Virus record (IMG/VR): IMGVR_UViG_3300021137_000001
Coordinates: 62,001-126,000 of that record
Reading direction: 5' to 3' (one strand)
DNA: 64,000 bases
A program made the position numbers and the translations under genes. Below the pieces are notes generated by a model. It was not told where the DNA came from. It was given only the letters and a program-made list of their open reading frames with translations, and did not search any database. How positions within the stretch are numbered: position 1 is the first letter of the stretch; every line of letters starts with the position of its first letter. Shown here piece after piece: positions 38,196-61,356 of this stretch.

Positions 38196-38253
38196 GTAGA
38201 TGCCTGATTAGGGTCTACGGCTATTACTTGCTTTTTAAAAGGAGAAATATATG
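38196..38253 (+). promoter_or_regulatory. ROSE-like RNA thermometer candidate in the dnaK 5' UTR
   Basis: GTAGA..TCTAC hairpin, then CTTGCT pairing with the SD AGGAG around a bulged G. Confidence 0.55.
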
Positions 38254-40167
38254 AGCAAAAATATCGTTCTAGGAATCGACCTCGGAACTACAAATAGTTG
38301 CGTCGCAATTTATGAAAATAACAAACCCCGTATAATTGAAAATAATGAAGGCGCACGTACTACACCATCAATCGTTGCTTATGGCGATGAGATTATTGTT
38401 GGCGCAAGTGCTAAACGTCAGTCAGTTACCAATCCAAAGAACACAATTTACGCAAGCAAACGACTTATTGGTCGCAAGTTTGACGAAGAAGCAGTACAAA
38501 AAGACATTGGCTTAATGCCATACAGTATCGTTAAGAACGTTAACGGTGATGCATGGGTAGAAGTTAACGGAGAGAAATTAGCACCTCCACAAATCTCAGC
38601 AGAAGTATTGCGCAAAATGAAATCAACCGCAGAAGACTATTTGGGTTATGCAGTAACGCAAGCAGTTATTACAGTACCAGCTTACTTCAATGATGCACAA
38701 CGTCAAGCAACTAAAGATGCAGGTCGTATTGCAGGCTTAGAAGTATTGCGTATTATTAACGAACCAACTGCAGCGGCATTAGCATTTGGTTGTGATAAAG
38801 GTGATAAAAAAGATCGCAAGATTGCTGTATATGACTTAGGTGGTGGTACATTTGACATTAGTATTATTGAAATTAGTGATGTAGATGGAGAGAAACAGTT
38901 TGAAGTACTTTCAACTAATGGCGATACATTCTTAGGTGGTGAAGACTTTGACCAACGTGTAATGGAATACTTAATCAGCGAGTTTAAGAAAGACTCTGGT
39001 ATTGATATTACTAAAGATATACTTGCACTACAACGCTTAAAAGAAGCCGCAGAGAAAGCAAAGATTGAGTTATCAAGCTCAACGCAAACAGAAGTAAATC
39101 TTCCATACATTACTGCTGACGCAACTGGTCCTAAGCATTTAGTTGTAAAACTTACCCGTGCTAAGTTCGAGAGTTTAGTTGAAGAACTAATTAAACGTTC
39201 AATTGATCCATGTAAGATTGCAGTTAAAGATTCTGGCATTAAAGTTAGCGACATTGATGATGTTATTCTTGTTGGCGGGCAAACACGTATGCCTAAAGTA
39301 CAAGAAGCTGTTGAAGCATTCTTTGGCAAAGCACCACGCAAAGACGTTAACCCAGATGAAGCAGTTGCAGTGGGTGCGGCAATTCAGGGTGCAGTGCTAG
39401 GTGGTGACAAAACAGACGTATTATTGCTTGATGTAACACCATTATCACTGGGAATTGAAACAATGGGTGGTATTATGACTAAGTTAATTAAGAAAAATAC
39501 AACTATCCCAACTAAAGCAAGCCAAACATTCTCTACAGCAGAGGATAATCAACCAGCTGTTACTGTTATGGTAGCACAAGGTGAGCGTGAATTTGTTAAA
39601 GACAACAAAGTACTTGGGCAGTTTAATTTAGAAGGTATCGCTCCAGCAATGCGCGGTGCTCCACAAATTGAAATTACACTAGACATTGATGCTAATGGTA
39701 TCTTAAAAGTAAGTGCTAAAGATAAAGCAACTGGCAAAGAAAACAAGATTACTATTAAAGCAAACAGTGGACTTACTGAAGCTGAAATTGAAGCAATGGT
39801 ACATGATGCAGAAGTTAATGCAGAAGCAGATACTAAGGCACGTGTAGTAGTCGAAGCAAAGAACGCGGCAGAAGCGCAAATCAATACAGTTAACAAAAAT
39901 CTTAAAGAACACGGCGATAAAATTACTGCTGAACAAAAGATTGAAATCGAAACTGCTATTACTGCGGCAGAAGCAACGTACACATCAGATGATGCAGAAG
40001 CAATTACTGCGGCAGTTGGTAAGGTATTTGAAGTTGCTAAACCATTGTTTGAAATTACTCAAGCACAAGAGTCGGCAACAGTTGAGCCAGGTGCGCAAAC
40101 AGAAACAGCGGCACAAGAAGGTGTTGTTGATGCAGAGTTTACGGAAGTTGATAAGGAGGCGAAATAA
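38251..40167 (+). CDS. dnaK: Hsp70 chaperone DnaK
   Basis: [32 protein letters not shown]. Confidence 0.98.
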
Positions 40168-40598
40168 TGCCAACAGTAGTGACCCCACCTGACATACGTA
40201 GATTTGCAGTAGGCTTTGAGAGTATTTTTATTAACTTAAATCGTACTGCTGGTACATTAAATGCAACTAACTATCCACCATACAATATTGTACGTTATAG
40301 TGAAACTGCATATACTGTTGAAATTGCAGTGGCTGGCTTTGCAGAAGATGAGCTCGATGTTGAAGTAATTAATCATGAGCTTGTTGTACACGGTGCAAGC
40401 AAGATAGTTGATGATCCAAATGTTGAATATATACATCGTGGCATTGCAACACGTAACTTTGTTCGTAGTTTTGCACTAGCAGAGAACGTTGAAGTAAAAG
40501 GTGCAGTTGTAAAGAATGGAATACTAACAGTAATGTTAGAGCATATCATTCCCGAAACTGCCAAGCCAAGAAAGGTTGCAATTTCCTTTCAACCGTAG
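40167..40598 (+). CDS. Small heat-shock protein (IbpA-like)
   Basis: YPPYNI, AVAGF, HRGIA, NGILTV. Confidence 0.93.
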   Translation: MPTVVTPPDIRRFAVGFESIFINLNRTAGTLNATNYPPYNIVRYSETAYTVEIAVAGFAEDELDVEVINHELVVHGASKIVDDPNVEYIHRGIATRNFVRSFALAENVEVKGAVVKNGILTVMLEHIIPETAKPRKVAISFQP

Positions 40599-51356: not shown

Positions 51357-51380
51357 ATGAAGATTGGAATTATCGGATAA
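51357..51380 (+). pseudogene. Orphan start of the nucleotide-sugar dehydrogenase (MKIGIIG*)
   Basis: Rossmann-type start; GGAATTATCGG duplicated at 52155-52165. Confidence 0.75.
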
Positions 51381-51387
51381 ATACTTT

Positions 51388-52143
51388 ATGCATAATTCTT
51401 CTCAACCTTATACCTATCTTATTGGATGGAGCAAATATAAAAAATATTATTACGGAGTTAGGTACGCTAAAAATTGTTTACCAACTGATTTATGGATTAA
51501 ATATTTCACCTCATCATTGATTGTTGCATCGACCCGAGTAGAACTCGGCGAGCCGGATATTATACAAGTTCGAAAAATATTTGTAACTAAAGAACAAGCA
51601 AGAAACTGGGAAACAAAGGTATTGAAACGAATGAAGGTAGTTGTTAGCGAAATGTTTCTTAATAAGAATGATAGACCTGCGCCACCAATAAGTAATCGAC
51701 CTATGTCAGAATATAATAAGAAAAAATTATTAGAAGCTAAATTAGGCAAACCTAGATCTGAAGTAACTAAACAAAAAATTAAAGAAGCAAGAGTTAACCA
51801 AGATATGAATTGCCGACTGGGGCATATTGTATCAGTAGAAACAAGACAAAAAATTCGTGATGCAAATTTAGGTAAAACAATGTCAGCTGACACAAAAGAC
51901 AAAATTTCAGCAGGCAACAAAGGAAAACATTTTGATAAACGATCAGTAGAAACAAGACAAAAAATTCGTGATGCAAATTTAGGTAAAACAATGTCAGCTG
52001 ACACAAAAGACAAAATTTCAGCAGGCAACAAAGGGAAACCAAAACCAATCACACAATGCCCGCATTGTTTAAAATTTGGTGGAGTTTCACAAATGCAACA
52101 GTGGCATTTTAATAAATGTAAACTTTTTAAGAAGGAAGTATAA
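51388..52143 (+). mobile_element. GIY-YIG-like homing endonuclease with NUMOD3 repeats
   Basis: PYTYLIGW...YYYGVR, YFTSS, CPHC..WHFNKC. Confidence 0.82.
51831..52034 (+). repeat. Exact 93-bp direct repeat (period 111 nt) inside the endonuclease
   Basis: 51831-51923 equals 51942-52034. Confidence 0.9.
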
Positions 52144-52934
52144 TGGCAATTATCGGAATTATCGGGTTTGGGTATGTCGGTGGCGCAGTAGCAAGTAGCT
52201 ATGCTGAAGAGAAATTATTAATCAACGACCCTATTGTTCATCCAGCATCGTCAGTTAGTTACGCAACAATGATGAAAAAATGTCGTGCAATATTTGTATG
52301 TGTGCCAACTCCGGAATCAGAGGATGGCACTTGTAATATAAGCATTATGACATCAGTATTAAATGGATTAAAAGGTTACGATGGTTTAGTAATCTGCAAA
52401 TGTACTGCTCCTCCCGATATATATAAACAATTAGAACACGACTTAGATCTTAAACTTGTACATGTTCCAGAGTTTTTAACGCAAGCACGTGCAAATGATG
52501 ATTATATCAACCCACATAAAATAGTAGTTGGCTGTAAGAAAAAATTACGCGAAGAAGTTGCTGATGTGATAATGGCAAGTGCTGTTAACTTTGACAGAGA
52601 TAATATCGAATACTGTGATATTGCTACTGCAAGTTTCTTTAAGTACTTCGCTAACAATATGCTGGCTATCAAAGTTGTATTGAACAACGAGTTTTCTGTA
52701 TTAGCAGGTGCGATGGGTGTTAAGTGGGAAGATATTGCTAGCATAGCATCAACCGATTCGAGACTCGGTGACACACATTGGTCAGTACCGGGCCCAGACG
52801 GACAAGTTGGCTTTGGTGGTGCTTGCTTTCCAAAAGATACAGAAGCATTTGCAAAACTTGCGAAGCCACATAATGTAAAATTATCTGTGCTTAATGCCGC
52901 AATACTGGCTAATAAACTAATGCGTGACGAATAA
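52143..52934 (+). CDS. UDP-glucose/GDP-mannose dehydrogenase-like protein
   Basis: GFGYVG, CVPTP, PEFL, GFGGACFPKD. Confidence 0.9.
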   Translation: MAIIGIIGFGYVGGAVASSYAEEKLLINDPIVHPASSVSYATMMKKCRAIFVCVPTPESEDGTCNISIMTSVLNGLKGYDGLVICKCTAPPDIYKQLEHDLDLKLVHVPEFLTQARANDDYINPHKIVVGCKKKLREEVADVIMASAVNFDRDNIEYCDIATASFFKYFANNMLAIKVVLNNEFSVLAGAMGVKWEDIASIASTDSRLGDTHWSVPGPDGQVGFGGACFPKDTEAFAKLAKPHNVKLSVLNAAILANKLMRDE

Positions 52935-54022: not shown

Positions 54023-54241
54023 ATGAGCGTACATCACAAGAAACATCATGTAAAGATACACAAATGGATACACGGGATATTAGAAGTAGTACATCACAAT
54101 TTTGAATCATTGGAAGAAGCATTAGGATTTGCTGATGAACATTCTGCTAACAAAGAACATTCCGGACATCAAGTTAAAGTGTACAACGAAGATAACGAAT
54201 TAGTACATACTACTAACTGCTATCACGATACTTACGCATAA
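54023..54241 (+). CDS. His-rich small protein
   Basis: 72 aa, His-rich. Confidence 0.55.
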   Translation: MSVHHKKHHVKIHKWIHGILEVVHHNFESLEEALGFADEHSANKEHSGHQVKVYNEDNELVHTTNCYHDTYA

Positions 54242-54356
54242 ATTAGATGTCTTTAATGGTTTTACGTATGTTAAATGGTGGTTTTCGGTGCTACTATAGT
54301 TATAAGTACTAGTAACAACACAACGTTGTTTTAGACTTTTATCTAGGAGAATTATT

Positions 54357-54428
54357 ATGTGGACTACACCAGCAGTTACTGAAATGAGATTTGGTATGGA
54401 AATTTGTATGTATGTGATGAACAAATAA
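54357..54428 (+). CDS. pqqA: PQQ precursor peptide PqqA (MWTTPAVTEMRFGMEICMYVMNK), not in the ORF track
   Basis: W-x-x-P...R-F-G-x-E-x-x-x-Y pattern; AGGAG SD; own terminator. Confidence 0.88.
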   Translation: MWTTPAVTEMRFGMEICMYVMNK

Positions 54429-54446
54429 TTATTGTTCTAAGTATAG

Positions 54447-54470
54447 AAAAGACACTCCGGTGTCTTTTTT
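54447..54470 (+). terminator. Intrinsic terminator after pqqA
   Basis: AAAAGACAC-TCCG-GTGTCTTTTTT. Confidence 0.85.
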
Positions 54471-54546
54471 AATGGCTAAATAATCATTGACAGTAGAACA
54501 ATTTAGTGTTATAATAGTACTTTAAATAATAACTTAGGTACATATT

Positions 54547-54810
54547 ATGTCAAAAATAGCTTCAGTTGAGCAATACAATATCGATAACTGCGACGCAGTA
54601 TTTGATGGTAATCGATTCCAATTAATTTTAGCCGCAGGCGTTCGAGCGCATGAGATTGCAACAGCTCGTGTGACTGCATCACGTAATGCTGGCGCGACCG
54701 GAGTTCAAGTAAGGCATGATAATCTTGCTGTAGTTGCGGCACTACTTGAAGTTGACACTGGCAAGTTTGGTAAAGAGTATTTAAACAAAGTAGGCAAGAC
54801 AGGTAAGTAA
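54547..54810 (+). CDS. rpoZ: RNA polymerase omega subunit-like protein
   Basis: NRFQLILAAGVRAHEI...VVAALLEVDTG. Confidence 0.7.
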   Translation: MSKIASVEQYNIDNCDAVFDGNRFQLILAAGVRAHEIATARVTASRNAGATGVQVRHDNLAVVAALLEVDTGKFGKEYLNKVGKTGK

Positions 54811-54860: not shown

Positions 54861-55280
54861 ATGACTAAAAAAGATAAGATTTATAAATGTTTAAATTGTG
54901 ATGCTATAATTCCGTTTAAAGGATATACATATACACACAAATACTGTAATAATAAATGTCAAAGTGAGTTAAGAGCAAAAGATGCGCTCGATAAACACAA
55001 AGTGGCATTTTTTGAAGGAAGTTGTAAAAGTAGGCCGAGAATTAGGCAGATACTTGCAGAAATTCGCGGATATAAATGTGAATGCTGTGGATTGTCGGAG
55101 TGGCAAGGTAATTCGATTGTGTTGCAAGTGGATCATATTAATGGTGATCCATATAATGACAATCCGGATAACTTGAGACTTATTTGTCCTAATTGTCATA
55201 GCCAAACCGATACATTTGCTGGAGCCAATAGAGGTAACGGTAGATGGAGTAAAGAAGGACTTGCAAGGTATTACAAGTAA
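54861..55280 (+). mobile_element. HNH endonuclease upstream of tRNAs
   Basis: CECC, LQVDHING, NLRLICPNCH. Confidence 0.88.
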
Positions 55281-55293
55281 TTTAATTTTAATT

Positions 55294-55369
55294 GGGTCGA
55301 TAACTCACTCGGCGAGAGTACTGTGCTCATAACGCAGAAGGCAGGGATCATAACCCTGGCGACCCACCA
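55294..55369 (+). tRNA. tRNA-Met/Ile2 (CAT) with atypical T-loop
   Basis: Cloverleaf, loop CTCATAA, CCA; T-loop ATCATAA. Confidence 0.75.
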
Positions 55370-55374
55370 ACAAA

Positions 55375-55452
55375 GCGTCCGTAGCTCATCTGGACTAGAG
55401 CATGGGATTTCTACTCCCAGGGTAGCTGGTTCGAATCCAGCCGGGCGCACCA
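55375..55452 (+). tRNA. tRNA-Arg (TCT)
   Basis: TGGGA-TTTCTAC-TCCCA, GGTTCGAATCC, CCA. Confidence 0.92.
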
Positions 55453-55473
55453 CTTTTTATATAAGGAAACACA

Positions 55474-55665
55474 ATGAGAACAAAGTCAGAATTTGATATT
55501 GCAATGGAAGAATTTTTAGCCAACGGTGGCGAAGTAAAACAAATAGCACGTGGCGTACAAAGTGAAACAGCAACAACAAACTTCTGGGGCGCACCAAAGA
55601 AAAAAGCCGCAGTAGAAGCAGTAAATGAGTTAGGCGCAACAGGTATTGACGTAATAGAAGAATAA
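55474..55665 (+). CDS. Small hypothetical protein
   Basis: AAGGA SD; EEFLANGGEVKQI motif. Confidence 0.65.
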   Translation: MRTKSEFDIAMEEFLANGGEVKQIARGVQSETATTNFWGAPKKKAAVEAVNELGATGIDVIEE

Positions 55666-55722
55666 TAATATCAGTTCAAAAATAAAATATAAATATATTA
55701 GTAATAATGGAGGTAACTCGAC

Positions 55723-56370
55723 TTGCACAATCCTGTAGAAAAACCAACTTGGTTATATAAACCTATCGATGATATCCCTGAATTGAATAAAATTCAAAAG
55801 GAATGTTTTCGAATCTATTCGGCTGTAAAGAAAGATATATGCAAAGATGTTGGCTGGGCCATTGCTGGAATAGAATTAGATATAATGAAAAAACTTGCAC
55901 CAAATTATATTAATTTTTTAAAAAAATTAGGGTTATACGAGATTTATGCCGGTACAGCATTTTCTGCTAGTATAGGGATACAAAAATATCCTTGTCCTGT
56001 ACACGTTGATTGTAAAGACTGGCGCCAATTACCATTTTCACTTAATATACCAGTTGTTGGATGTGAGGATAGTTATACTGTTTTTTATGATGTTGATGAA
56101 TCATCCGATCCTGCAAACGCATTACCAGATACATGGGATAATAATTATATGAAAATGAATAAAATTGAAGGAGTGGTCGGATATTCCGAAAAAACAGCAA
56201 AAGAAATTGGCAGAATGCCTGCTACCCAACCTGCATTTGTAAACATTGGTATTCCTCACCGCCCTGTGACAAATCATACTAATCTAAGATTAGTTATGTT
56301 ATCGAGATTTACACCTGACATATTTGATTATGTAAATAATGACATATTTAAAACTAAATTATCAGAATAA
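55723..56370 (+). CDS. Putative 2OG-Fe(II)/cupin-like protein
   Basis: HVD...SLNIP...H pattern. Confidence 0.5.
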   Translation: MHNPVEKPTWLYKPIDDIPELNKIQKECFRIYSAVKKDICKDVGWAIAGIELDIMKKLAPNYINFLKKLGLYEIYAGTAFSASIGIQKYPCPVHVDCKDWRQLPFSLNIPVVGCEDSYTVFYDVDESSDPANALPDTWDNNYMKMNKIEGVVGYSEKTAKEIGRMPATQPAFVNIGIPHRPVTNHTNLRLVMLSRFTPDIFDYVNNDIFKTKLSE

Positions 56371-56411
56371 TACCAGTTCAAAAATAAATGATAAATAATT
56401 AGATAAAGTGC

Positions 56412-56440
56412 TTGACAAGAGTATAAATAGAATATATAAT
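56412..56440 (+). promoter_or_regulatory. Promoter of the tRNA array (sigma70 with nested late box)
   Basis: TTGACA-N17-TATAAT with TATAAATA inside the spacer. Confidence 0.85.
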
Positions 56441-56474
56441 AGTTGTATAAGTTAATAAGGAAGTGAGAAAACAA

Positions 56475-56600
56475 ATGTTCAAATCGTTACATCAGTTTAA
56501 GATATCAACACTCGTGCAGTTATGCGGCGTGTCTTCTTATTGGTCAGCGATTGAGATGAATACGAGTGATCGCGCACCGAATAGAAAGGGTTTAAGTTAA
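56475..56600 (+). CDS. Putative attenuator leader peptide (41 aa, all 20 amino acids)
   Basis: MFKSLHQFKISTLVQLCGVSSYWSAIEMNTSDRAPNRKGLS*; last codons form the antiterminator 5' arm. Confidence 0.65.
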   Translation: MFKSLHQFKISTLVQLCGVSSYWSAIEMNTSDRAPNRKGLS

Positions 56601-56661
56601 CGTTTATTATTATATATGAATTTTTACTTAAACCTTAGAATTAAAAACTCTAAGGTTTTTT
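56587..56661 (+). terminator. Antiterminator/terminator switch ahead of the tRNA array
   Basis: 56587-56597 pairs with 56626-56636; alternative terminator CCTTAGA/TCTAAGG plus T6. Confidence 0.75.
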
Positions 56662-56775
56662 GCTTTTAGCAGTAAGTGTTTTGGAAACGAGGTCCATAAC
56701 TAAACACTATAAAGATTGTAAGTTGAACGGGCGGAACTAGGGATGAAGCACCTTGTGTGGTGTGAAAAATCTAGC

Positions 56776-56856
56776 ATAATAAAGTACATTAATCGGCAAC
56801 TAGGTCCCACGCAATGTGGATTATGTCAGAGGCGAGTAATTAGTGTGCTTTATTAT
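56776..56856 (+). ncRNA. Long-stem small RNA unit 1
   Basis: 18-bp closing stem with two G-U pairs. Confidence 0.5.
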
Positions 56857-56900
56857 ACGCATTCACATGAGTGCGGTACACAATTTGTAGTGCATTTTGT

Positions 56901-56975
56901 CAGGGTATAGCTCAGCCTGGCCAGAGTCCTCGGTTTGGAACCGAGTTGTCGTAAGTTCGAATCTTACTACCCTGA
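56901..56975 (+). tRNA. tRNA-Pro (TGG), no encoded CCA
   Basis: CTCGG-TTTGGAA-CCGAG; acceptor stem extended by a flanking inverted repeat. Confidence 0.88.
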
Positions 56976-57080
56976 CAAAATGCATTACTTAAAAAGAGGT
57001 TAACACATACGGTAATTGGTAGTATAATAGCTACTTGAAGTTAAGTAATACGCTCTTTAACAGTTTGGAAGTTTTACAAT

Positions 57081-57153
57081 ATCGCATTCATCTAGTGGCC
57101 TAAGATACTGCCCTTTCACGGCAGGTACACGGATTCGAATTCCGTATGCGATA
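57081..57153 (+). tRNA. tRNA-Glu (TTC), no encoded CCA
   Basis: CTGCC-CTTTCAC-GGCAG; ATCGCAT/ATGCGAT acceptor. Confidence 0.88.
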
Positions 57154-57182
57154 CACATAGTAAATTTTGTATAAATACAAGT

Positions 57183-57794
57183 ATGACATATTACTACTTG
57201 TATCAAATCACTAATTTAGTGAATGCAAAAATTTACGTTGGAGTACATAAAACGAAATCATTAGATGACGGATATATGGGCTCTGGAAAAATTATTCAAT
57301 GTGCAATTAAAAAACACGGAATTGATAATTTTAAAAAAGACATACTTGAGACTTTTGACACATCAGAAGCTATGTATGCACGTGAGAAAGAAATAGTAAC
57401 AGATCAGTTTCTGTTACGCGAAGATACCTATAACTTACGTAGAGGCGGAACTGGCGGATTTGATTATATAAACAAGCAACCATGGGTGCATACTACAAAC
57501 AGGATAATAGGAGATATAAAGAAAAGTAAAACATTAAAAGGTAGACGCCCTTCTGAAAATACGTTAATAGCAGTAAGGTTAATGCATCAAGACGGAAGAG
57601 TAAAGTATGATACGTTTACTGGTAAACAGCATACCATCGAAACTAAACAAAAAATGTCAATTGCGAAAAAAGGAAAAGGATGCAATCAGCATAACAGTCA
57701 ATTCGGTACTATATGGATAACGGATGGTATAAGTAACAAAAAAATAAAGAAAGATGTTACTATTCCAGAAGGATGGAATAGAGGTAGAAGTTAA
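57183..57794 (+). mobile_element. GIY-YIG (SegB-like) homing endonuclease in the tRNA array
   Basis: YLYQITN...IYVGVH, YMGSG, YNLRRGG. Confidence 0.88.
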
Positions 57795-57798
57795 GACC

Positions 57799-57904
57799 AT
57801 ATTAAAACATATTTGACCAAGTCGGTGTTCCTTGATGCTAGGATTAGAGCGGACAGCAGTCCGCGAGATGTAGTTGCGATATTACAGCAAGTGTGTTTTA
57901 ATAT
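57799..57904 (+). ncRNA. Long-stem small RNA unit 2
   Basis: 17-bp closing stem with G-U pairs; internal GCGGAC/GTCCGC hairpin. Confidence 0.5.
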
Positions 57905-57915
57905 AGTAAGTCTAT

Positions 57916-57989
57916 TGGCTCATGGTGTAGTGGTAGCACAACAGGTTTTGATCCTGTTAGTTGTAGTTCGATTCTACATGGGCCTGCCA
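57916..57989 (+). tRNA. tRNA-Gln (TTG)
   Basis: ACAGG-TTTTGAT-CCTGT, CCA. Confidence 0.9.
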
Positions 57990-58058
57990 AGTTTTAATGG
58001 AGTGGAAATACCATACTATCAGTCCGTTATGTATAAATACATATATAGGAGAACTGAT

Positions 58059-58457
58059 ATGTTTAAGAACAGTAAGAAACAAGGTGACGCTGGATTAGGG
58101 CAAGCAATAGCATATTTTACAATGAAAGGATATGATGTTGCGTTGCCACTAACAGATAGCGCAGACTGGGATATGATTGTTGAGATAGATGGTGAACTTA
58201 AAAGAGTCCAAGTTAAAACATCTAAACAACTATCTAAAACGGGTATAATGATGTTTAATGCTAATGTAAATGGCGGCAACATGTCATTTAATAAAAAACC
58301 TAAACTTATACCAGAACAACAATGGGATTTATTGTTCTTACATCACTTAGTGACAAATAAGCAAGCATTGATTCCTAAAGAAGCACTAACTACAAAAGGT
58401 CAAGTGAACTTAGGTAGTAGTCAATGTAAGTATAAAGATTTTATGATTAATGGATGA
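58059..58457 (+). mobile_element. PD-(D/E)XK endonuclease (I-Ssp6803I-like family)
   Basis: KQGD..., WDMIVE..RVQVKT; AGGAG SD; stop overlaps tRNA-Tyr. Confidence 0.75.
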
Positions 58458-58537
58458 GCGGCGCAGTTGGAGAGGCGCGGGAGACTGTAAATCTCTTTTC
58501 CCTGAATGAGTAGGTTCGAATCTTACCTCATCCACCA
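58452..58537 (+). tRNA. tRNA-Tyr (GTA)
   Basis: GGAGA-CTGTAAA-TCTCT, long variable arm, CCA. Confidence 0.9.
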
Positions 58538-58542
58538 ATTTA

Positions 58543-58619
58543 GTTGTGTCGTCGGTTCGAAGCCAACCTGTAATCAAGCGAAATAGCAGTTACAGTAGTT
58601 TACTTGGTAAAACAACAAC
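58543..58619 (+). ncRNA. Circularly permuted, anticodon-less tRNA-like element
   Basis: T-arm and 3' acceptor strand precede the 5' acceptor strand and D-arm; ends pair GTTGT/ACAAC. Confidence 0.65.
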
Positions 58620-58651
58620 AATTTTTGTAGTAAATTTAATAGGAGCAACAC

Positions 58652-58672
58652 ATGAAGCGAGTTAAACTTTAG
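58652..58672 (+). CDS. Mini-ORF MKRVKL* upstream of tRNA-Lys
   Basis: AGGAG SD 6 nt before ATG; AAG and AAA codons. Confidence 0.65.
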   Translation: MKRVKL

Positions 58673-58743
58673 TGTCGTCTTTAATCCCATTGTACTGTAT
58701 TAAAGGTAACGGCACGTTAAATCTTTAATACAGTACAATGGGA
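58672..58743 (+). promoter_or_regulatory. Two-state RNA switch overlapping the tRNA-Lys 5' end
   Basis: Perfect 21-bp inverted repeat 58685-58705/58723-58743 versus alternative 58672-58685/58699-58715. Confidence 0.7.
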
Positions 58744-58815
58744 GTATGGTGAAATTGGTTATCACATGGGACTTTTAATCCTTCGTTCAGAGTTCAAGTC
58801 TCTGTGCTCCTACCA
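58740..58815 (+). tRNA. tRNA-Lys (TTT)
   Basis: Loop CTTTTAA; weak anticodon stem TGGGA/TCCTT; CCA. Confidence 0.85.
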
Positions 58816-58922
58816 TAAGAAAGTACATTGCTAACGCCTCTGAGAAGGGTTCCGGTAGTCCTGTATCAATTAATAGCTAAGTCAGCAGATGGGTTCGCTG
58901 AATGTAGTGTACTTCCTTATGG
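58813..58922 (+). ncRNA. Long-stem small RNA unit 3
   Basis: About 18-bp closing stem beginning at the tRNA-Lys CCA. Confidence 0.5.
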
Positions 58923-58929
58923 TTTCAAT

Positions 58930-59004
58930 GTTGTTTATAGTGTAGCGATAACACCCCATCCTGTGAAGATGGTATCACGAGTTTGAACCTCGTTAGACAA
59001 CCCA
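58930..59004 (+). tRNA. tRNA-His (GTG)
   Basis: G-1:C73, CCATC-CTGTGAA-GATGG, CCA. Confidence 0.88.
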
Positions 59005-59062
59005 ACTTTTAATATGGCTTCCGTCCGTAGAATACTGCTTGCAGTCGGCCCGGAAGTTCTTT

Positions 59063-59137
59063 GGCCGATTCGTATAATGATCATTACACGGGATTGTCTA
59101 TCCTGCTATGAGAGTTTGATTCTCTCATCGGTCGCCA
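59063..59137 (+). tRNA. tRNA-Asp (GTC)
   Basis: CGGGA-TTGTCTA-TCCTG, G73, CCA. Confidence 0.88.
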
Positions 59138-59200
59138 AGTTTTAAAATAATAGTTGACAGTGTGTATTAGAACTGTTACACTATGTAGATAGTAACAAAT

Positions 59201-59329
59201 AAGTATTTGGAAGAAAGTCGCAACTTAATGTATTCGTGGGAAGGAGAGTGCGACATCCCGTCCGAAAGAGTAGGTGATGCTACGGTGTAACTCCGTCATT
59301 TGAATTACTGTATGATTCTGCACATACTT
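59201..59329 (+). ncRNA. Candidate structured RNA after an internal promoter
   Basis: AAGTAT/ATACTT closure, GTCGCA/TGCGAC, possible GGGA/TCCC pseudoknot, ACGG/CCGT hairpin. Confidence 0.4.
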
Positions 59330-59360
59330 AACAGGCATGTATTTGCCGCAGAACTTATAT

Positions 59361-59435
59361 CGCGGAGTGGGGAAGTGGCAACCCGGAAGGCTCATAACCT
59401 TTAGATCGGCAGTTCGAATCTGTCCTCCGCAACCA
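59361..59435 (+). tRNA. Initiator tRNA-fMet (CAT)
   Basis: C1xA72 mismatch, CTCATAA loop, CCA. Confidence 0.88.
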
Positions 59436-59440
59436 GTAAT

Positions 59441-59515
59441 GCCGCCTTAGCTCATTTGGTAGAGCAACGCACTTGTAATGCGTAGGCGCCCAGTTCGAAC
59501 CCGGGAGGCGGACCA
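59441..59515 (+). tRNA. tRNA-Thr (TGT), acceptor 3' strand one nt short
   Basis: ACGCA-CTTGTAA-TGCGT; ends AGGCGGACCA. Confidence 0.8.
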
Positions 59516-59523
59516 ATTTTAAT

Positions 59524-59597
59524 GCGGCTATGATGTAATGGTAACCTAAAACTTTGCCAAAGTTTAATCGCGAGTTCGATTCTCGCTAGCCGCTCCA
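59524..59597 (+). tRNA. tRNA-Gly (GCC)
   Basis: AAACT-TTGCCAA-AGTTT, U73, CCA. Confidence 0.9.
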
Positions 59598-59661
59598 AAT
59601 TTTGCTTGACAAAATGTCAAAACGAATGTATAATACACTTAATTAAAAAAAGGAGGCTGAC

Positions 59662-60054
59662 ATGTACTACGATGAAGTAAAGTTTGAAGAATTAAAAGGT
59701 AAGGTATTAGTTAGTGCAACAGTCTCTGACTATAAAGATGAAATGAAGTTTGTAACAACAGACGGCGAAATATATACTTTGTATCACGCACAAGATTGTT
59801 GTGAATCAGTGGAAATTGAATCTATCGTTGGTGACTTAGCTGATTTAGTTGGCGAAGAAATCTTAATGGCAGAAGAAGCACAAAACTTATTTGACTTGAT
59901 TAAATCTGCAGGAGTCGAAGAAGAAGATGAATACGGTTCACACACTTGGACATTTTACAAACTAGCAACTCGCAAAGGGTACGTTGACATCAGATGGTAT
60001 GGTTCGAGCAACGGGTACTATTCAGAGGAAGTTTCTTTTAAAAGAGAGAAATAA
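59662..60054 (+). CDS. Conserved phage hypothetical protein
   Basis: HAQDCCESV, WTFYKL, SNGYYSE; sigma70 promoter and AGGAGG SD. Confidence 0.75.
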   Translation: MYYDEVKFEELKGKVLVSATVSDYKDEMKFVTTDGEIYTLYHAQDCCESVEIESIVGDLADLVGEEILMAEEAQNLFDLIKSAGVEEEDEYGSHTWTFYKLATRKGYVDIRWYGSSNGYYSEEVSFKREK

Positions 60055-60055
60055 T

Positions 60056-60217
60056 ATGACTTCTAAAAAACCACAGTGGGTTAAAGATAAAGAAGCACTG
60101 CAAACTGCGCCCCCAGAGACAATTATTATAATTGGCAAAATGGGCGCAGATGGTGTTATTAACGGTCGGCTACCGAGCGGTGAAATCTATCATCGCAATA
60201 AAAGGCAACATAGATAA
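60056..60217 (+). CDS. Hypothetical protein
   Basis: Short ORF in operon. Confidence 0.5.
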   Translation: MTSKKPQWVKDKEALQTAPPETIIIIGKMGADGVINGRLPSGEIYHRNKRQHR

Positions 60218-60588
60218 TGGACTTTACAATTGACCCAGAGTACTTAACAAGTGTAACTATTCGCGATGAGTGGAACACGTATACACGTAATGGTCGTGTA
60301 CCTACAGCAGAAGAACTTATTTTAATTATTCAAGGCAAGGGTGAGTGCTCGACTACTAGTTCAGCCGACCACCCAGAGTTTGCTAAGTTACGTGAGGAAC
60401 TAGGTTTGCTACGTTATATTCATATACAGCGTAGTTGGTGGAATGGCGATAGTGTATTAAAACCATTCACACTTAACGGAAGAAAGTTTAAGGTAGGAGC
60501 ACAGTTTAGCAGTGGTAGTGCAATGGGTACACACCTTATTGTACGTGCTAAACACCCAGAATATTATAAGGATGAATATGATGATTAA
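60217..60588 (+). CDS. Hypothetical protein
   Basis: Coupled ORF. Confidence 0.65.
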   Translation: MDFTIDPEYLTSVTIRDEWNTYTRNGRVPTAEELILIIQGKGECSTTSSADHPEFAKLREELGLLRYIHIQRSWWNGDSVLKPFTLNGRKFKVGAQFSSGSAMGTHLIVRAKHPEYYKDEYDD

Positions 60589-61066
60589 ACCATGGATTGA
60601 AAACGTTAGTATGAAAGACGTACAAGTAGGCGAGCACTTTGATGCTGGCACTAACTCTATGCTTATTCAAATCGTTGACCCTATTACTCTTTTTCCAACA
60701 CCAAAGTTTGCATTTAAAGAAGTGCATCAGTTTAAGTTTTTAGATGCAGAAGATACTGACGTTGCAGAGTACGGCGAAGAGCCATTGATTAGCGATCAGC
60801 AAGCAGAAGCAATTTTACAGTTGCTACAACGTGCGCTAGCCGACAATATGAACATTGTTGTACATTGTCACGCTGGTTTATGTCGTAGTGGTGCAGTAGT
60901 AGAAATTGGTGTTATGATGGGCTTTAGAGATACTGAAAAGTTTCGCAGTCCTAACCTACGTGTTAAACACAAACTAATGAAATTGCTTGGGCTAACACAT
61001 AACCCAGATGAGCAACACAACTGGCGTGATGATTATAGACATCACTTAACTAAAAGCAATATGTAA
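60578..61066 (+). CDS. Protein-tyrosine/dual-specificity phosphatase-like protein
   Basis: VHCHAGLCRS (CX5R). Confidence 0.85.
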   Translation: MMIKPWIENVSMKDVQVGEHFDAGTNSMLIQIVDPITLFPTPKFAFKEVHQFKFLDAEDTDVAEYGEEPLISDQQAEAILQLLQRALADNMNIVVHCHAGLCRSGAVVEIGVMMGFRDTEKFRSPNLRVKHKLMKLLGLTHNPDEQHNWRDDYRHHLTKSNM

Positions 61067-61077
61067 AGGAGTAGTAC

Positions 61078-61272
61078 ATGATTAAGTTATCCCCAACGGG
61101 TAAGATATCCAAAAATGCTAACAAAGAACTTTGTCTTAACACCGAGTTCAAAGTTAGCATTGATGTACGTAATGTAACGTACGATAACATTGATGAAAAG
61201 ATTGCTGAGCTTATTGCAGAGGCACACAAAGTCAAACAAGTACTCGAACAAAACATAGTAACATCAAATTAA
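61078..61272 (+). CDS. Hypothetical protein
   Basis: AAGGAG SD. Confidence 0.6.
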   Translation: MIKLSPTGKISKNANKELCLNTEFKVSIDVRNVTYDNIDEKIAELIAEAHKVKQVLEQNIVTSN

Positions 61273-61280
61273 AAGAATAC

Positions 61281-61356
61281 GCAACCTTAGCTCATCTGGT
61301 AGAGCACCTGCTTGAAGCGCAGGGTGTGTTTGGTTCAAGTCCAAGAGGTTGCACCA
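61281..61356 (+). tRNA. tRNA-Phe (GAA)
   Basis: CCTGC-TTGAAGC-GCAGG, CCA. Confidence 0.9.

What the first reader, a model, noticed from the sequence alone, without database searches (positions are those of the whole stretch)
54340..54470. Stand-alone phage pqqA
Seen: a 23-aa ORF below the track cut-off with SD and terminator, keeping the Glu-x3-Tyr pair that is cross-linked into PQQ. Known: PqqA is consumed stoichiometrically and PQQ is the cofactor of methanol dehydrogenases. From memory the peptide resembles Methylophilaceae PqqA. Inference: the phage boosts (or, with EICMY in place of the usual EVTMY, modulates) PQQ supply, and the host is a methylotroph. No other pqq genes are in the window.
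Basis: partly seen in the sequence, partly recalled or inferred. Interest (0 to 1): 0.65.

Follow-up and report, generated by a model that had tools for sequence, protein, structure and literature searches.

The report
Jumbo phage carries lone PQQ precursor gene
A complete 329-kb phage of methanol-eating bacteria carries only the tiny pqqA gene, whose peptide is consumed to make the cofactor PQQ; phage pqqA was reported once before, is common in aquatic phages, and this copy has an odd core.

Summary
Window 54357-54428 (+) is a 23-codon ORF with an AGGAG Shine-Dalgarno site 7 nt upstream and a strong hairpin plus T-run after it. It scores above the curated cut-offs of both PqqA models (PF08042 34.3/21.1 bits; TIGR02107 38.7/20).

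- **Genome:** a complete 329,321-bp jumbo myophage with terminal repeats. It has no pqqB, C, D or E and no PQQ alcohol dehydrogenase.
- **Nearest relative:** the peptide matches the operon-linked PqqA of Methylotenera-type Methylophilaceae at 20 of 23 residues. Leader 1-13 and tail 18-23 are identical.
- **Odd core:** all three changes (F14M, V16I, T17C) flank the cross-linked Glu15. This core occurs in none of 361 Methylophilaceae genomes, and Cys at Glu+2 is unique among 189 distinct PqqA peptides gathered here.
- **Selection:** outside the core, synonymous sites are near saturation with no residue change, so the peptide is under purifying selection.
- **Best reading:** the phage supplies the consumed precursor to the host's own PqqBCDE. 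This is inferred, not shown.
- **Novelty:** a Lake Baikal phage PqqA was reported in 2020. I found pqqA in at least 237 IMG/VR contigs and, unannotated, in the cultured OM43 phage Melnitz.

Whether the variant core still yields PQQ is open.

The parts
54345..54349 (+). Shine-Dalgarno AGGAG, 7 nt before the ATG. The 11 nt before the ATG (GGAGAATTATT) are identical to those before a stand-alone pqqA of a Methylotenera MAG (L126).
54357..54428 (+). pqqA: 23 codons plus TAA. Leader residues 1-13, cross-link pair Glu15/Tyr19, variant core G-M-E-I-C-M-Y.
54444..54471 (+). Intrinsic-terminator-like hairpin (12-bp stem, TCCG loop) ending in six T. It closes the transcription unit.
54242..54344 (+). 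Upstream spacer with no recognisable sigma-70 or T4-type late promoter (only CATAAATT at 54237-54244, one mismatch). pqqA is probably read through from the upstream glycosyltransferase cluster; the nearest upstream late-type motif is at 52934.
54487..54515 (+). Context, not part of pqqA: perfect TTGACA-17-TATAAT promoter with TG, starting the next unit (RNAP-omega-like ORF 54547-54810).
54200..54424 (-). 74-aa antisense ORF over pqqA, with no convincing family match. This is the kind of frame a gene caller picks instead of the 23-codon gene, as happened in the Melnitz record.

Best explanation
The ORF is a phage-borne pqqA, an auxiliary metabolic gene. Its ancestor was a stand-alone pqqA of a Methylophilaceae host, taken up together with its ribosome-binding site and terminator architecture. 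During infection the 23-aa peptide is made from phage transcripts. Its host-identical leader is bound by the host chaperone PqqD and presented to the radical-SAM enzyme PqqE, which links Glu15 to Tyr19. Host peptidases, PqqB and PqqC then finish PQQ. Each PQQ molecule consumes one peptide, whereas the enzymes are catalytic. The phage therefore needs to supply only the consumable to keep the periplasmic PQQ methanol dehydrogenase, and hence energy supply, running after host transcription fades. Shown here: family membership, the phage context, absence of the other pqq genes, host-family match, purifying selection on leader and tail, and recurrence in many phages. Inferred: expression, PqqD/PqqE processing, and the benefit to the phage.
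For: - HMM membership above curated cut-offs.
- A real, complete phage: 329,321 bp with direct terminal repeats; major head, prohead protease, portal and baseplate hub genes; major capsid protein 65-67% identical to jumbo myophages such as PA5oct.
- Nothing else of the pathway and no PQQ alcohol dehydrogenase in the genome.
- 20 of 23 residues identical to the pqqA heading the pqqABCDE operon in Methylotenera-type genomes, with leader 1-13 and tail 18-23 identical.
- The RBS-to-ATG stretch is identical to a Methylotenera stand-alone copy, and host copies also end in a hairpin plus T-run.
- 121 of 121 Methylophilaceae genomes searched hold 1-12 pqqA copies, so extra stand-alone copies are the family's own way of raising supply. 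This agrees with the literature: PqqA protein about 20-fold over PqqC/E in Klebsiella (PMC2294125); stand-alone copies among the most expressed in Hyphomicrobium (PMC9851590).
- Outside the core, pS is 0.55-0.83 and pN 0.02.
- At least 237 IMG/VR contigs carry pqqA next to portal, capsid, endolysin and recombination genes. These include related jumbo phages and the cultured OM43 phage Melnitz.
- Earlier report of the same idea: PMC7678222.
Against:
- No dedicated promoter is recognisable.
- The core differs from every other PqqA gathered. Cys at Glu+2 occurs in 1 of 189 distinct peptides. G-F-E-[VI]-T-M-Y is invariant in 116 type-1 viral loci whose pattern left those positions free. 0 of 361 Methylophilaceae genomes hold G-M-E-I-C-M-Y.
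- The three replacements need about 5-6 nucleotide changes and are clustered (p about 0.035). The core may therefore have been reshaped by selection for something other than plain substrate supply, or may be impaired.
- Only one phage population carries it: L003 and L004 are DNA-identical to the window.
- Unlike the Baikal phages, this genome has no methanol dehydrogenase.
Confidence: 0.6

Rival explanations
1. Modulator or decoy. The host-identical leader still docks on PqqD/PqqE, but the altered core (Met before Glu, Ile and Cys after it) is processed poorly or differently. It could quench the Glu radical or form another cross-link. The peptide would then throttle or redirect host PQQ synthesis rather than feed it.
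For: All three replacements flank Glu15 while 20 other residues are untouched despite near-saturated synonymous change. Cys at Glu+2 is unique among 189 peptides, and the core is absent from 361 host-family genomes and from the other phage contigs. From own knowledge: PqqE belongs to the SPASM radical-SAM group, which includes thioether-forming maturases.
Against: There is no obvious benefit to a phage of lowering its host's energy cofactor. More than 230 other phage copies keep the canonical host core. Met at Glu-1 and Ile at Glu+1 occur in ordinary PqqAs of other lineages. The three linker residues are cut away and vary between lineages.
Confidence: 0.13
2. Decaying passenger. A host pqqA picked up with other DNA, possibly moved with the neighbouring homing endonucleases, is no longer useful and its core has begun to drift.
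For: Unique core substitutions at positions that are invariant in the host family. Homing-endonuclease genes flank the locus. pqqA sits at different places in related jumbo phages. No own promoter was found.
Against: The ORF, Glu/Tyr pair, SD and terminator are intact. There is no residue change in 20 non-core codons against pS 0.55-0.83. Drift would not confine three multi-nucleotide replacements to a 4-residue span (p about 0.035). Phages shed useless DNA, yet the gene recurs in hundreds of phage contigs.
Confidence: 0.15
3. Precursor of a different small product. The peptide would be matured by host or phage enzymes, for example the phage's B12-binding radical SAM protein, into something other than PQQ.
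For: The phage encodes a radical SAM enzyme elsewhere (G000:C1:31471-33063). The core holds an extra Cys.
Against: That enzyme lies 84 kb away, is of the B12-binding class without a SPASM match, and no PqqD-like recognition domain exists in the genome. The leader is exactly the host's PqqD-binding leader.
Confidence: 0.04
4. Chance small ORF, or the real gene is the 74-aa antisense frame.
For: The ORF is below gene-caller cut-offs, and an antisense ORF of 74 aa exists.
Against: E 3e-9 over the whole genome. SD and terminator are in place. All neighbouring genes are on the + strand. The antisense frame has no credible family match.
Confidence: 0.01

Closest known systems
PqqA of Methylophilaceae (operon-linked copy of Methylotenera sp. 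and Methylophilaceae MAGs, e.g. NCBI PKO46424.1 / MDO9150348.1; loci L125-L127, L406)
   Same: 23 aa. Residues 1-13 and 18-23 are identical. Glu-x3-Tyr, the RBS-ATG spacing, and a hairpin plus T-run after the stop are shared.
   Different: F14M, V16I and T17C. About 79% nucleotide identity with near-saturated synonymous change. The gene is on a phage with no pqqBCDE beside or anywhere near it.
PqqA of the Lake Baikal T4-like phage population VP_266 (Coutinho et al. 2020, Microbiome 8:163, PMC7678222)
   Same: Phage-borne pqqA, a predicted Methylophilaceae host, GC about 35-37%, and the proposed role of supporting methanol oxidation.
   Different: Those phages also carry a methanol dehydrogenase gene; this genome has none. 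This one is a 329-kb jumbo phage. The sequences could not be compared because the Baikal contigs are not held under that name.
Unannotated pqqA of the cultured OM43 phage Melnitz EXVC044M (MZ577097.1, 76134-76208, + strand)
   Same: Stand-alone 24-codon pqqA with the E-M-R-F-G leader end, next to tRNA genes, on a myophage whose host is a known Methylophilaceae-related methylotroph.
   Different: Melnitz keeps the canonical G-F-E-V-T-M-Y core. It has a 141-kb genome of Kyanoviridae. The record annotates a hypothetical CDS on the opposite strand instead.
Cyanophage psbA (D1 protein), as an analogy from own knowledge and not a relative
   Same: Same logic: the phage carries only the rapidly consumed component of a host energy system and relies on the host for the rest.
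   Different: Unrelated protein and pathway. For psbA, expression and function during infection are experimentally shown; here they are not.

Membership tests
PqqA (PF08042 / TIGR02107) | Profile match above the curated cut-off | tested here: met
   34.3 bits against 21.1; 38.7 bits against 20; the only match in the genome, E 3e-9.
PqqA (PF08042 / TIGR02107) | Short peptide (about 20-40 aa) with the Glu-X-X-X-Tyr pair that becomes PQQ | tested here: met
   23 aa with Glu15 and Tyr19. The motif is defined in PMC2294125.
PqqA (PF08042 / TIGR02107) | N-terminal leader (W-x-x-P ...) recognised by PqqD | tested here: inconclusive
   Residues 1-13 are identical to the operon PqqA of Methylotenera-type genomes, so recognition is expected. 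Binding itself cannot be tested here, and the peptide is below the 30-residue guide of complex prediction.
PqqA (PF08042 / TIGR02107) | Core residues around Glu as conserved in the nearest lineage (G-F-E-V/I-T-M-Y) | tested here: not met
   The core is G-M-E-I-C-M-Y. It is found in 0 of 361 Methylophilaceae genomes. Cys at Glu+2 occurs in 1 of 189 distinct peptides. This is a lineage feature and not a family-defining one, since other lineages use M, L / I / N here.
PqqA (PF08042 / TIGR02107) | Genomic link to pqqBCDE | tested here: not met
   None in the 329-kb genome. This is not disqualifying: Methylophilaceae keep 1-12 copies, most of them dispersed away from the operon.
PqqA (PF08042 / TIGR02107) | Conversion to PQQ by PqqE/D, peptidase, PqqB and PqqC | not testable with these tools
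   Needs biochemistry or complementation.
Phage auxiliary metabolic gene | Located inside a bona fide, complete phage genome rather than host contamination | tested here: met
   Direct terminal repeats and 100% completeness. Head, portal, protease and baseplate genes. T4-type late motif enriched 10-12 fold upstream of genes. Phage genes and tRNAs lie on both sides.
Phage auxiliary metabolic gene | Host possesses the pathway that the gene plugs into | tested here: met
   pqqA-B-C-D-E operon in G004; PqqC in G002, G003 and G004. The host assignment itself is an inference.
Phage auxiliary metabolic gene | Expressed during infection | not testable with these tools

The most novel reading that the evidence does not exclude
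The phage peptide is not a plain substrate. It keeps the host's PqqD-binding leader but carries a re-engineered core, with a Cys two residues after the radical-bearing Glu that no other PqqA gathered here has. It may act as a leader-competent decoy or alternative substrate of the host PqqD/PqqE machinery, so that the phage tunes PQQ synthesis, or a different cross-linked product, rather than simply topping it up.
Probability: 0.13. Interest if true: 0.75.

Novelty: new member of a known kind. Interest (0 to 1): 0.5.

Why it matters
PQQ methanol dehydrogenase is the entry point of methanol carbon and energy in Methylophilaceae, which are abundant in lakes and coastal seas. If phages keep PQQ synthesis running by supplying only the consumable precursor, that is a very economical form of metabolic takeover: 72 bases.

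It also shows how such genes are missed. The ORF is under gene-caller length limits, is absent from PHROGs, and is annotated on the wrong strand in a cultured phage.

The survey made here shows the gene in at least 237 viral contigs of two host-matched sequence types. It is also in Melnitz, whose OM43 host is in culture, so the hypothesis can be tested at the bench. The unique core of this copy offers a natural variant for asking what PqqE tolerates between Glu and Tyr.

Tried and rejected

- The search for related loci, the search for homologous proteins and the look-up of encoding contigs refuse a 23-24-aa query. I used degenerate DNA patterns and an exact-sequence look-up instead.
- Complex prediction was not used. 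The peptide is shorter than the 30 residues the tool asks for, and the leader is identical to the host's anyway.
I repeated it with a wildcard regular expression and locus ids only.
- Three papers were not held or not informative.

**Searches that gave nothing or were not decisive**
- Megablast of the locus against INPHARED phages found no match.
- L003 and L004 looked like independent relatives carrying the same peptide but are DNA-identical to the window, so they give no evolutionary information.
- The phage DnaK as a host marker is 70-73% identical to all Methylophilaceae DnaKs. That is as good as the best of a 201-genome Pseudomonadota sample but not specific.

**Ideas rejected**
- I considered that phages with the marine (type-2) peptide infect hosts lacking the pathway, which would have undermined the supply model. 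The same core heads pqqBCDE operons on low-GC marine contigs.
- I considered the phage radical SAM protein as a PqqE substitute. It is a B12-binding class enzyme with only an 11.6-bit PqqE match.

Full report
**What is there.** Window 54357-54428 on the + strand is a 23-codon ORF with an ATG start and TAA stop. AGGAG lies at 54345-54349, seven bases before the ATG. Sixteen bases after the stop codon a 12-bp hairpin begins (54444-54471, core GACAC-TCCG-GTGTC) that ends in six T. It folds at -14.5 kcal/mol, z = -4.2, and none of 200 shuffles folds as well. The simple terminator scan does not list it, apparently because the stem runs into the T tract. The peptide scores 34.3 bits against Pfam PqqA (gathering cut-off 21.1) and 38.7 bits against TIGR02107 (cut-off 20). 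It is the only such match in the whole genome (E 3e-9). The Glu-x3-Tyr pair is Glu15 and Tyr19.

**The genome around it.**
- The window is bases 62001-126000 of an IMG/VR record of 329,321 bp with direct terminal repeats, rated complete.
- It is a real tailed phage. Major head protein, prohead protease, portal and baseplate hub genes lie at 314-323 kb.
- The capsid protein is 65-67% identical to those of jumbo myophages such as Vibrio phage 2.275.O, Sinorhizobium phage Phosso and Pseudomonas phage PA5oct.
- The genome has 75 near-perfect sigma-70 promoters, and a T4-type late motif (NATAAATA) is enriched 10-12 fold upstream of genes.
- GC content is 37.4%.
- The whole genome has no PqqD, PqqC or PqqB. 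For PqqE there is only an 11.6-bit match, inside a B12-binding radical SAM protein. There is no PQQ-dependent alcohol dehydrogenase. The gene truly stands alone.
- Upstream lie glycosyltransferase and UDP-glucose-dehydrogenase-like genes. Downstream lie an RNAP-omega-like ORF behind a perfect promoter, an HNH endonuclease, and a 13-tRNA array interleaved with homing endonucleases.
- The 115-nt spacer before pqqA holds no recognisable promoter. The gene is probably the last cistron of the upstream unit, which ends at the hairpin.

**Whose PqqA it resembles.**
- A strict degenerate pattern for the leader end and core hit only five of the GTDB species-representative genomes. All are Methylophilaceae, Methylotenera or an unclassified betaproteobacterial MAG.
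- Their peptide is named PqqA of Methylotenera sp. and Methylophilaceae in NCBI. It matches the phage peptide at 20 of 23 positions.
- In two of those genomes this copy heads a pqqA-B-C-D-E operon, confirmed with NCBIfam equivalogs.
- Low-GC, 1.2-1.4-Mb members of the family match at 19 of 23.
- All 121 family genomes searched hold pqqA, at 1-12 copies each, mostly dispersed.
- The 11 bases before the ATG are identical between the phage and a stand-alone Methylotenera copy, and host copies also end in a hairpin plus T-run.
- The phage DnaK is 70-73% identical to all Methylophilaceae DnaKs. That equals the best found in a 201-genome sample of the phylum, so it is consistent but not specific.
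- The host inference (a Methylophilaceae, hence a methylotroph) is well supported but indirect.

**The odd core.**
- The three differences from the host peptide are F14M, V16I and T17C, all flanking Glu15.
- Among 189 distinct PqqA peptides pooled from phage contigs, host genomes and metagenomes, Glu+2 is Thr (68), Asn (120) or Cys (this phage only). Met at Glu-1 and Ile at Glu+1 occur in other lineages.
- In 116 viral loci found with a pattern that left these positions free, G-F-E-[V/I]-T-M-Y is invariant.
- None of the 361 Methylophilaceae genomes held contains G-M-E-I-C-M-Y.
- The exact peptide is not in the 15-billion-protein collection.
- Two other IMG/VR contigs with the peptide are DNA-identical to the window, so they are the same phage population.
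- Codon by codon against six nearest copies, the 19 non-core codons show pS 0.55-0.83 and pN 0.02 with no residue change. The three core codons show pN 0.68-0.78.
- Three replacements falling within a span of four residues has a chance of about 0.035.
- The leader and tail are therefore under strong purifying selection, and the core has been specifically altered. Whether that happened in the phage or in an unsampled donor cannot be told.

**How common phage pqqA is.**
Together they gave 237 contigs, every one translating to a PqqA-like small ORF.
- There are two main sequence types. Type 1, the Methylophilaceae type, is in 136 contigs. Type 2, an alphaproteobacterial-style core G-L-E-I-N-C/S-Y-A-C-A-E, is in 91 mostly low-GC contigs.
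- The commonest flanking gene clusters are phage genes: portal, major head, endolysin, RecE-like exonuclease, Sak annealing protein, nucleotide kinase and GroES. Several clusters are shared by both types.
- Relatives of this jumbo phage with capsid protein 78% identical also carry pqqA with the canonical core, but at other genome positions. This points to repeated gain or movement.
- A type-2 contig is most like the phages Melnitz and HTVC008M.
- The cultured OM43 phage Melnitz has a 24-codon pqqA at MZ577097.1 76134-76208 (+), scoring 31.6 bits, between two tRNA genes. The record does not annotate it and instead lists a hypothetical CDS on the opposite strand. HTVC008M has none.
- The type-2 core also heads pqqBCDE operons on low-GC marine metagenome contigs, so those hosts own the pathway too.
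- PHROGs has no family for the peptide.

**Literature.**
- Coutinho et al. 2020 (PMC7678222) reported PqqA together with methanol dehydrogenase in Lake Baikal T4-like phages predicted to infect Methylophilaceae, and proposed the same role.
- A 2026 survey lists viral pqqA among phosphorus-cycling genes (PMC13188868).
- The Melnitz paper mentions PQQ only as a medium additive (PMC9004378).
- PMC2294125 gives the Glu-X-X-X-Tyr motif, loss of PQQ on Glu-to-Asp or Tyr-to-Phe replacement, and PqqA at about 20-fold the level of PqqC/E.
- PMC9851590 describes five pqqA copies in Hyphomicrobium, with stand-alone copies among the most expressed.

**Mechanism and rivals.**
- Best reading (0.6): the phage supplies the stoichiometrically consumed precursor to the host's PqqD/E/B/C to sustain PQQ and methanol oxidation during infection.
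- Rivals: a leader-competent modulator or decoy (0.13); a decaying passenger (0.15); a precursor of another product (0.04); a chance ORF (0.01).

**Verdict.** This is a genuine stand-alone phage pqqA from a probable Methylophilaceae jumbo phage. It is a new member of a kind already reported once, with a unique and possibly meaningful core. The wider picture is of moderate interest: the gene is widespread, under-annotated, and present in a culturable phage-host pair.

Noticed in passing
MZ577097.1 76134-76208 (+) = L162:1495-1569: The cultured OM43 phage Melnitz carries a 24-codon PqqA-family ORF (31.6 bits, cut-off 20) between tRNA-Arg and tRNA-Leu. The record does not annotate it and has a hypothetical CDS on the opposite strand instead. 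Pelagibacter phage HTVC008M has none.
   Followed up: yes
IMG/VR loci L005-L123 (e.g. L073, L020, L006, L047); metagenome loci L300, L305, L337, L340: At least 91 viral contigs, mostly low-GC, carry a second PqqA type with an invariant core G-L-E-I-N-C/S-Y-A-C-A-E and a variable leader. The same core heads pqqBCDE operons on 29-37% GC marine contigs. NCBI MAGs holding these peptides are labelled Pelagibacterales, Rickettsiales and even Euryarchaeota, possibly mis-binned phage DNA. The host was not identified.
   Followed up: partly
window 38251-40164 and 40167-40595: The phage encodes a full-length DnaK (Hsp70), 70-73% identical to betaproteobacterial DnaK, followed directly by an Hsp20 small heat-shock protein.
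   Followed up: partly
window 54487-54810 and 55474-55665: A perfect TTGACA-17-TATAAT promoter drives an 87-aa ORF with a sub-threshold RNA polymerase omega (Rpb6) match (23.3 bits against 26). A 63-aa ORF nearby has a borderline SutA RNAP-binding-domain match (28.8 against 29.3). These may be host-polymerase modifiers.
   Followed up: no
window 55294-61356: An array of 13 tRNA genes starts 870 bases after pqqA and is interleaved with homing-endonuclease ORFs (54861-55280 HNH, 57183-57794). Melnitz also has its pqqA among tRNA genes.
   Followed up: partly
window 51364-52931: The UDP-glucose/GDP-mannose dehydrogenase-like ORF (52143-52931) lacks about the first 66 positions of the NAD-binding domain and sits directly after a homing-endonuclease ORF (51364-52143). 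This may be a gene split by a mobile element.
   Followed up: no
G000:C1:31471-33063 (L002:850-2442), outside the window: A 531-aa B12-binding-domain radical SAM protein. It is the only weak 'PqqE' match in the genome and is not a PqqE.
   Followed up: partly
L036 (IMGVR_UViG_3300017957_000348) and G565 (IMGVR_UViG_3300023174_000036, 356 kb): Two relatives of this jumbo phage (major capsid protein 78% identical) also carry pqqA with the canonical core, but at other positions. In L036 it lies directly downstream of the capsid gene. In G565 its flanks are unrelated to those here.
   Followed up: partly
whole genome G000: A T4-type late-promoter motif (C/G-ATAAATA) is enriched 10-12 fold in the 120 nt upstream of ORFs, and there are 75 near-perfect sigma-70 promoters. 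This suggests a T4-like early/late programme in a PA5oct-like jumbo phage.
   Followed up: partly
PHROGs v4 library: The 23-aa PqqA gets no PHROG match at E up to 1. Standard phage annotation therefore cannot name this gene even if it is called.
   Followed up: yes
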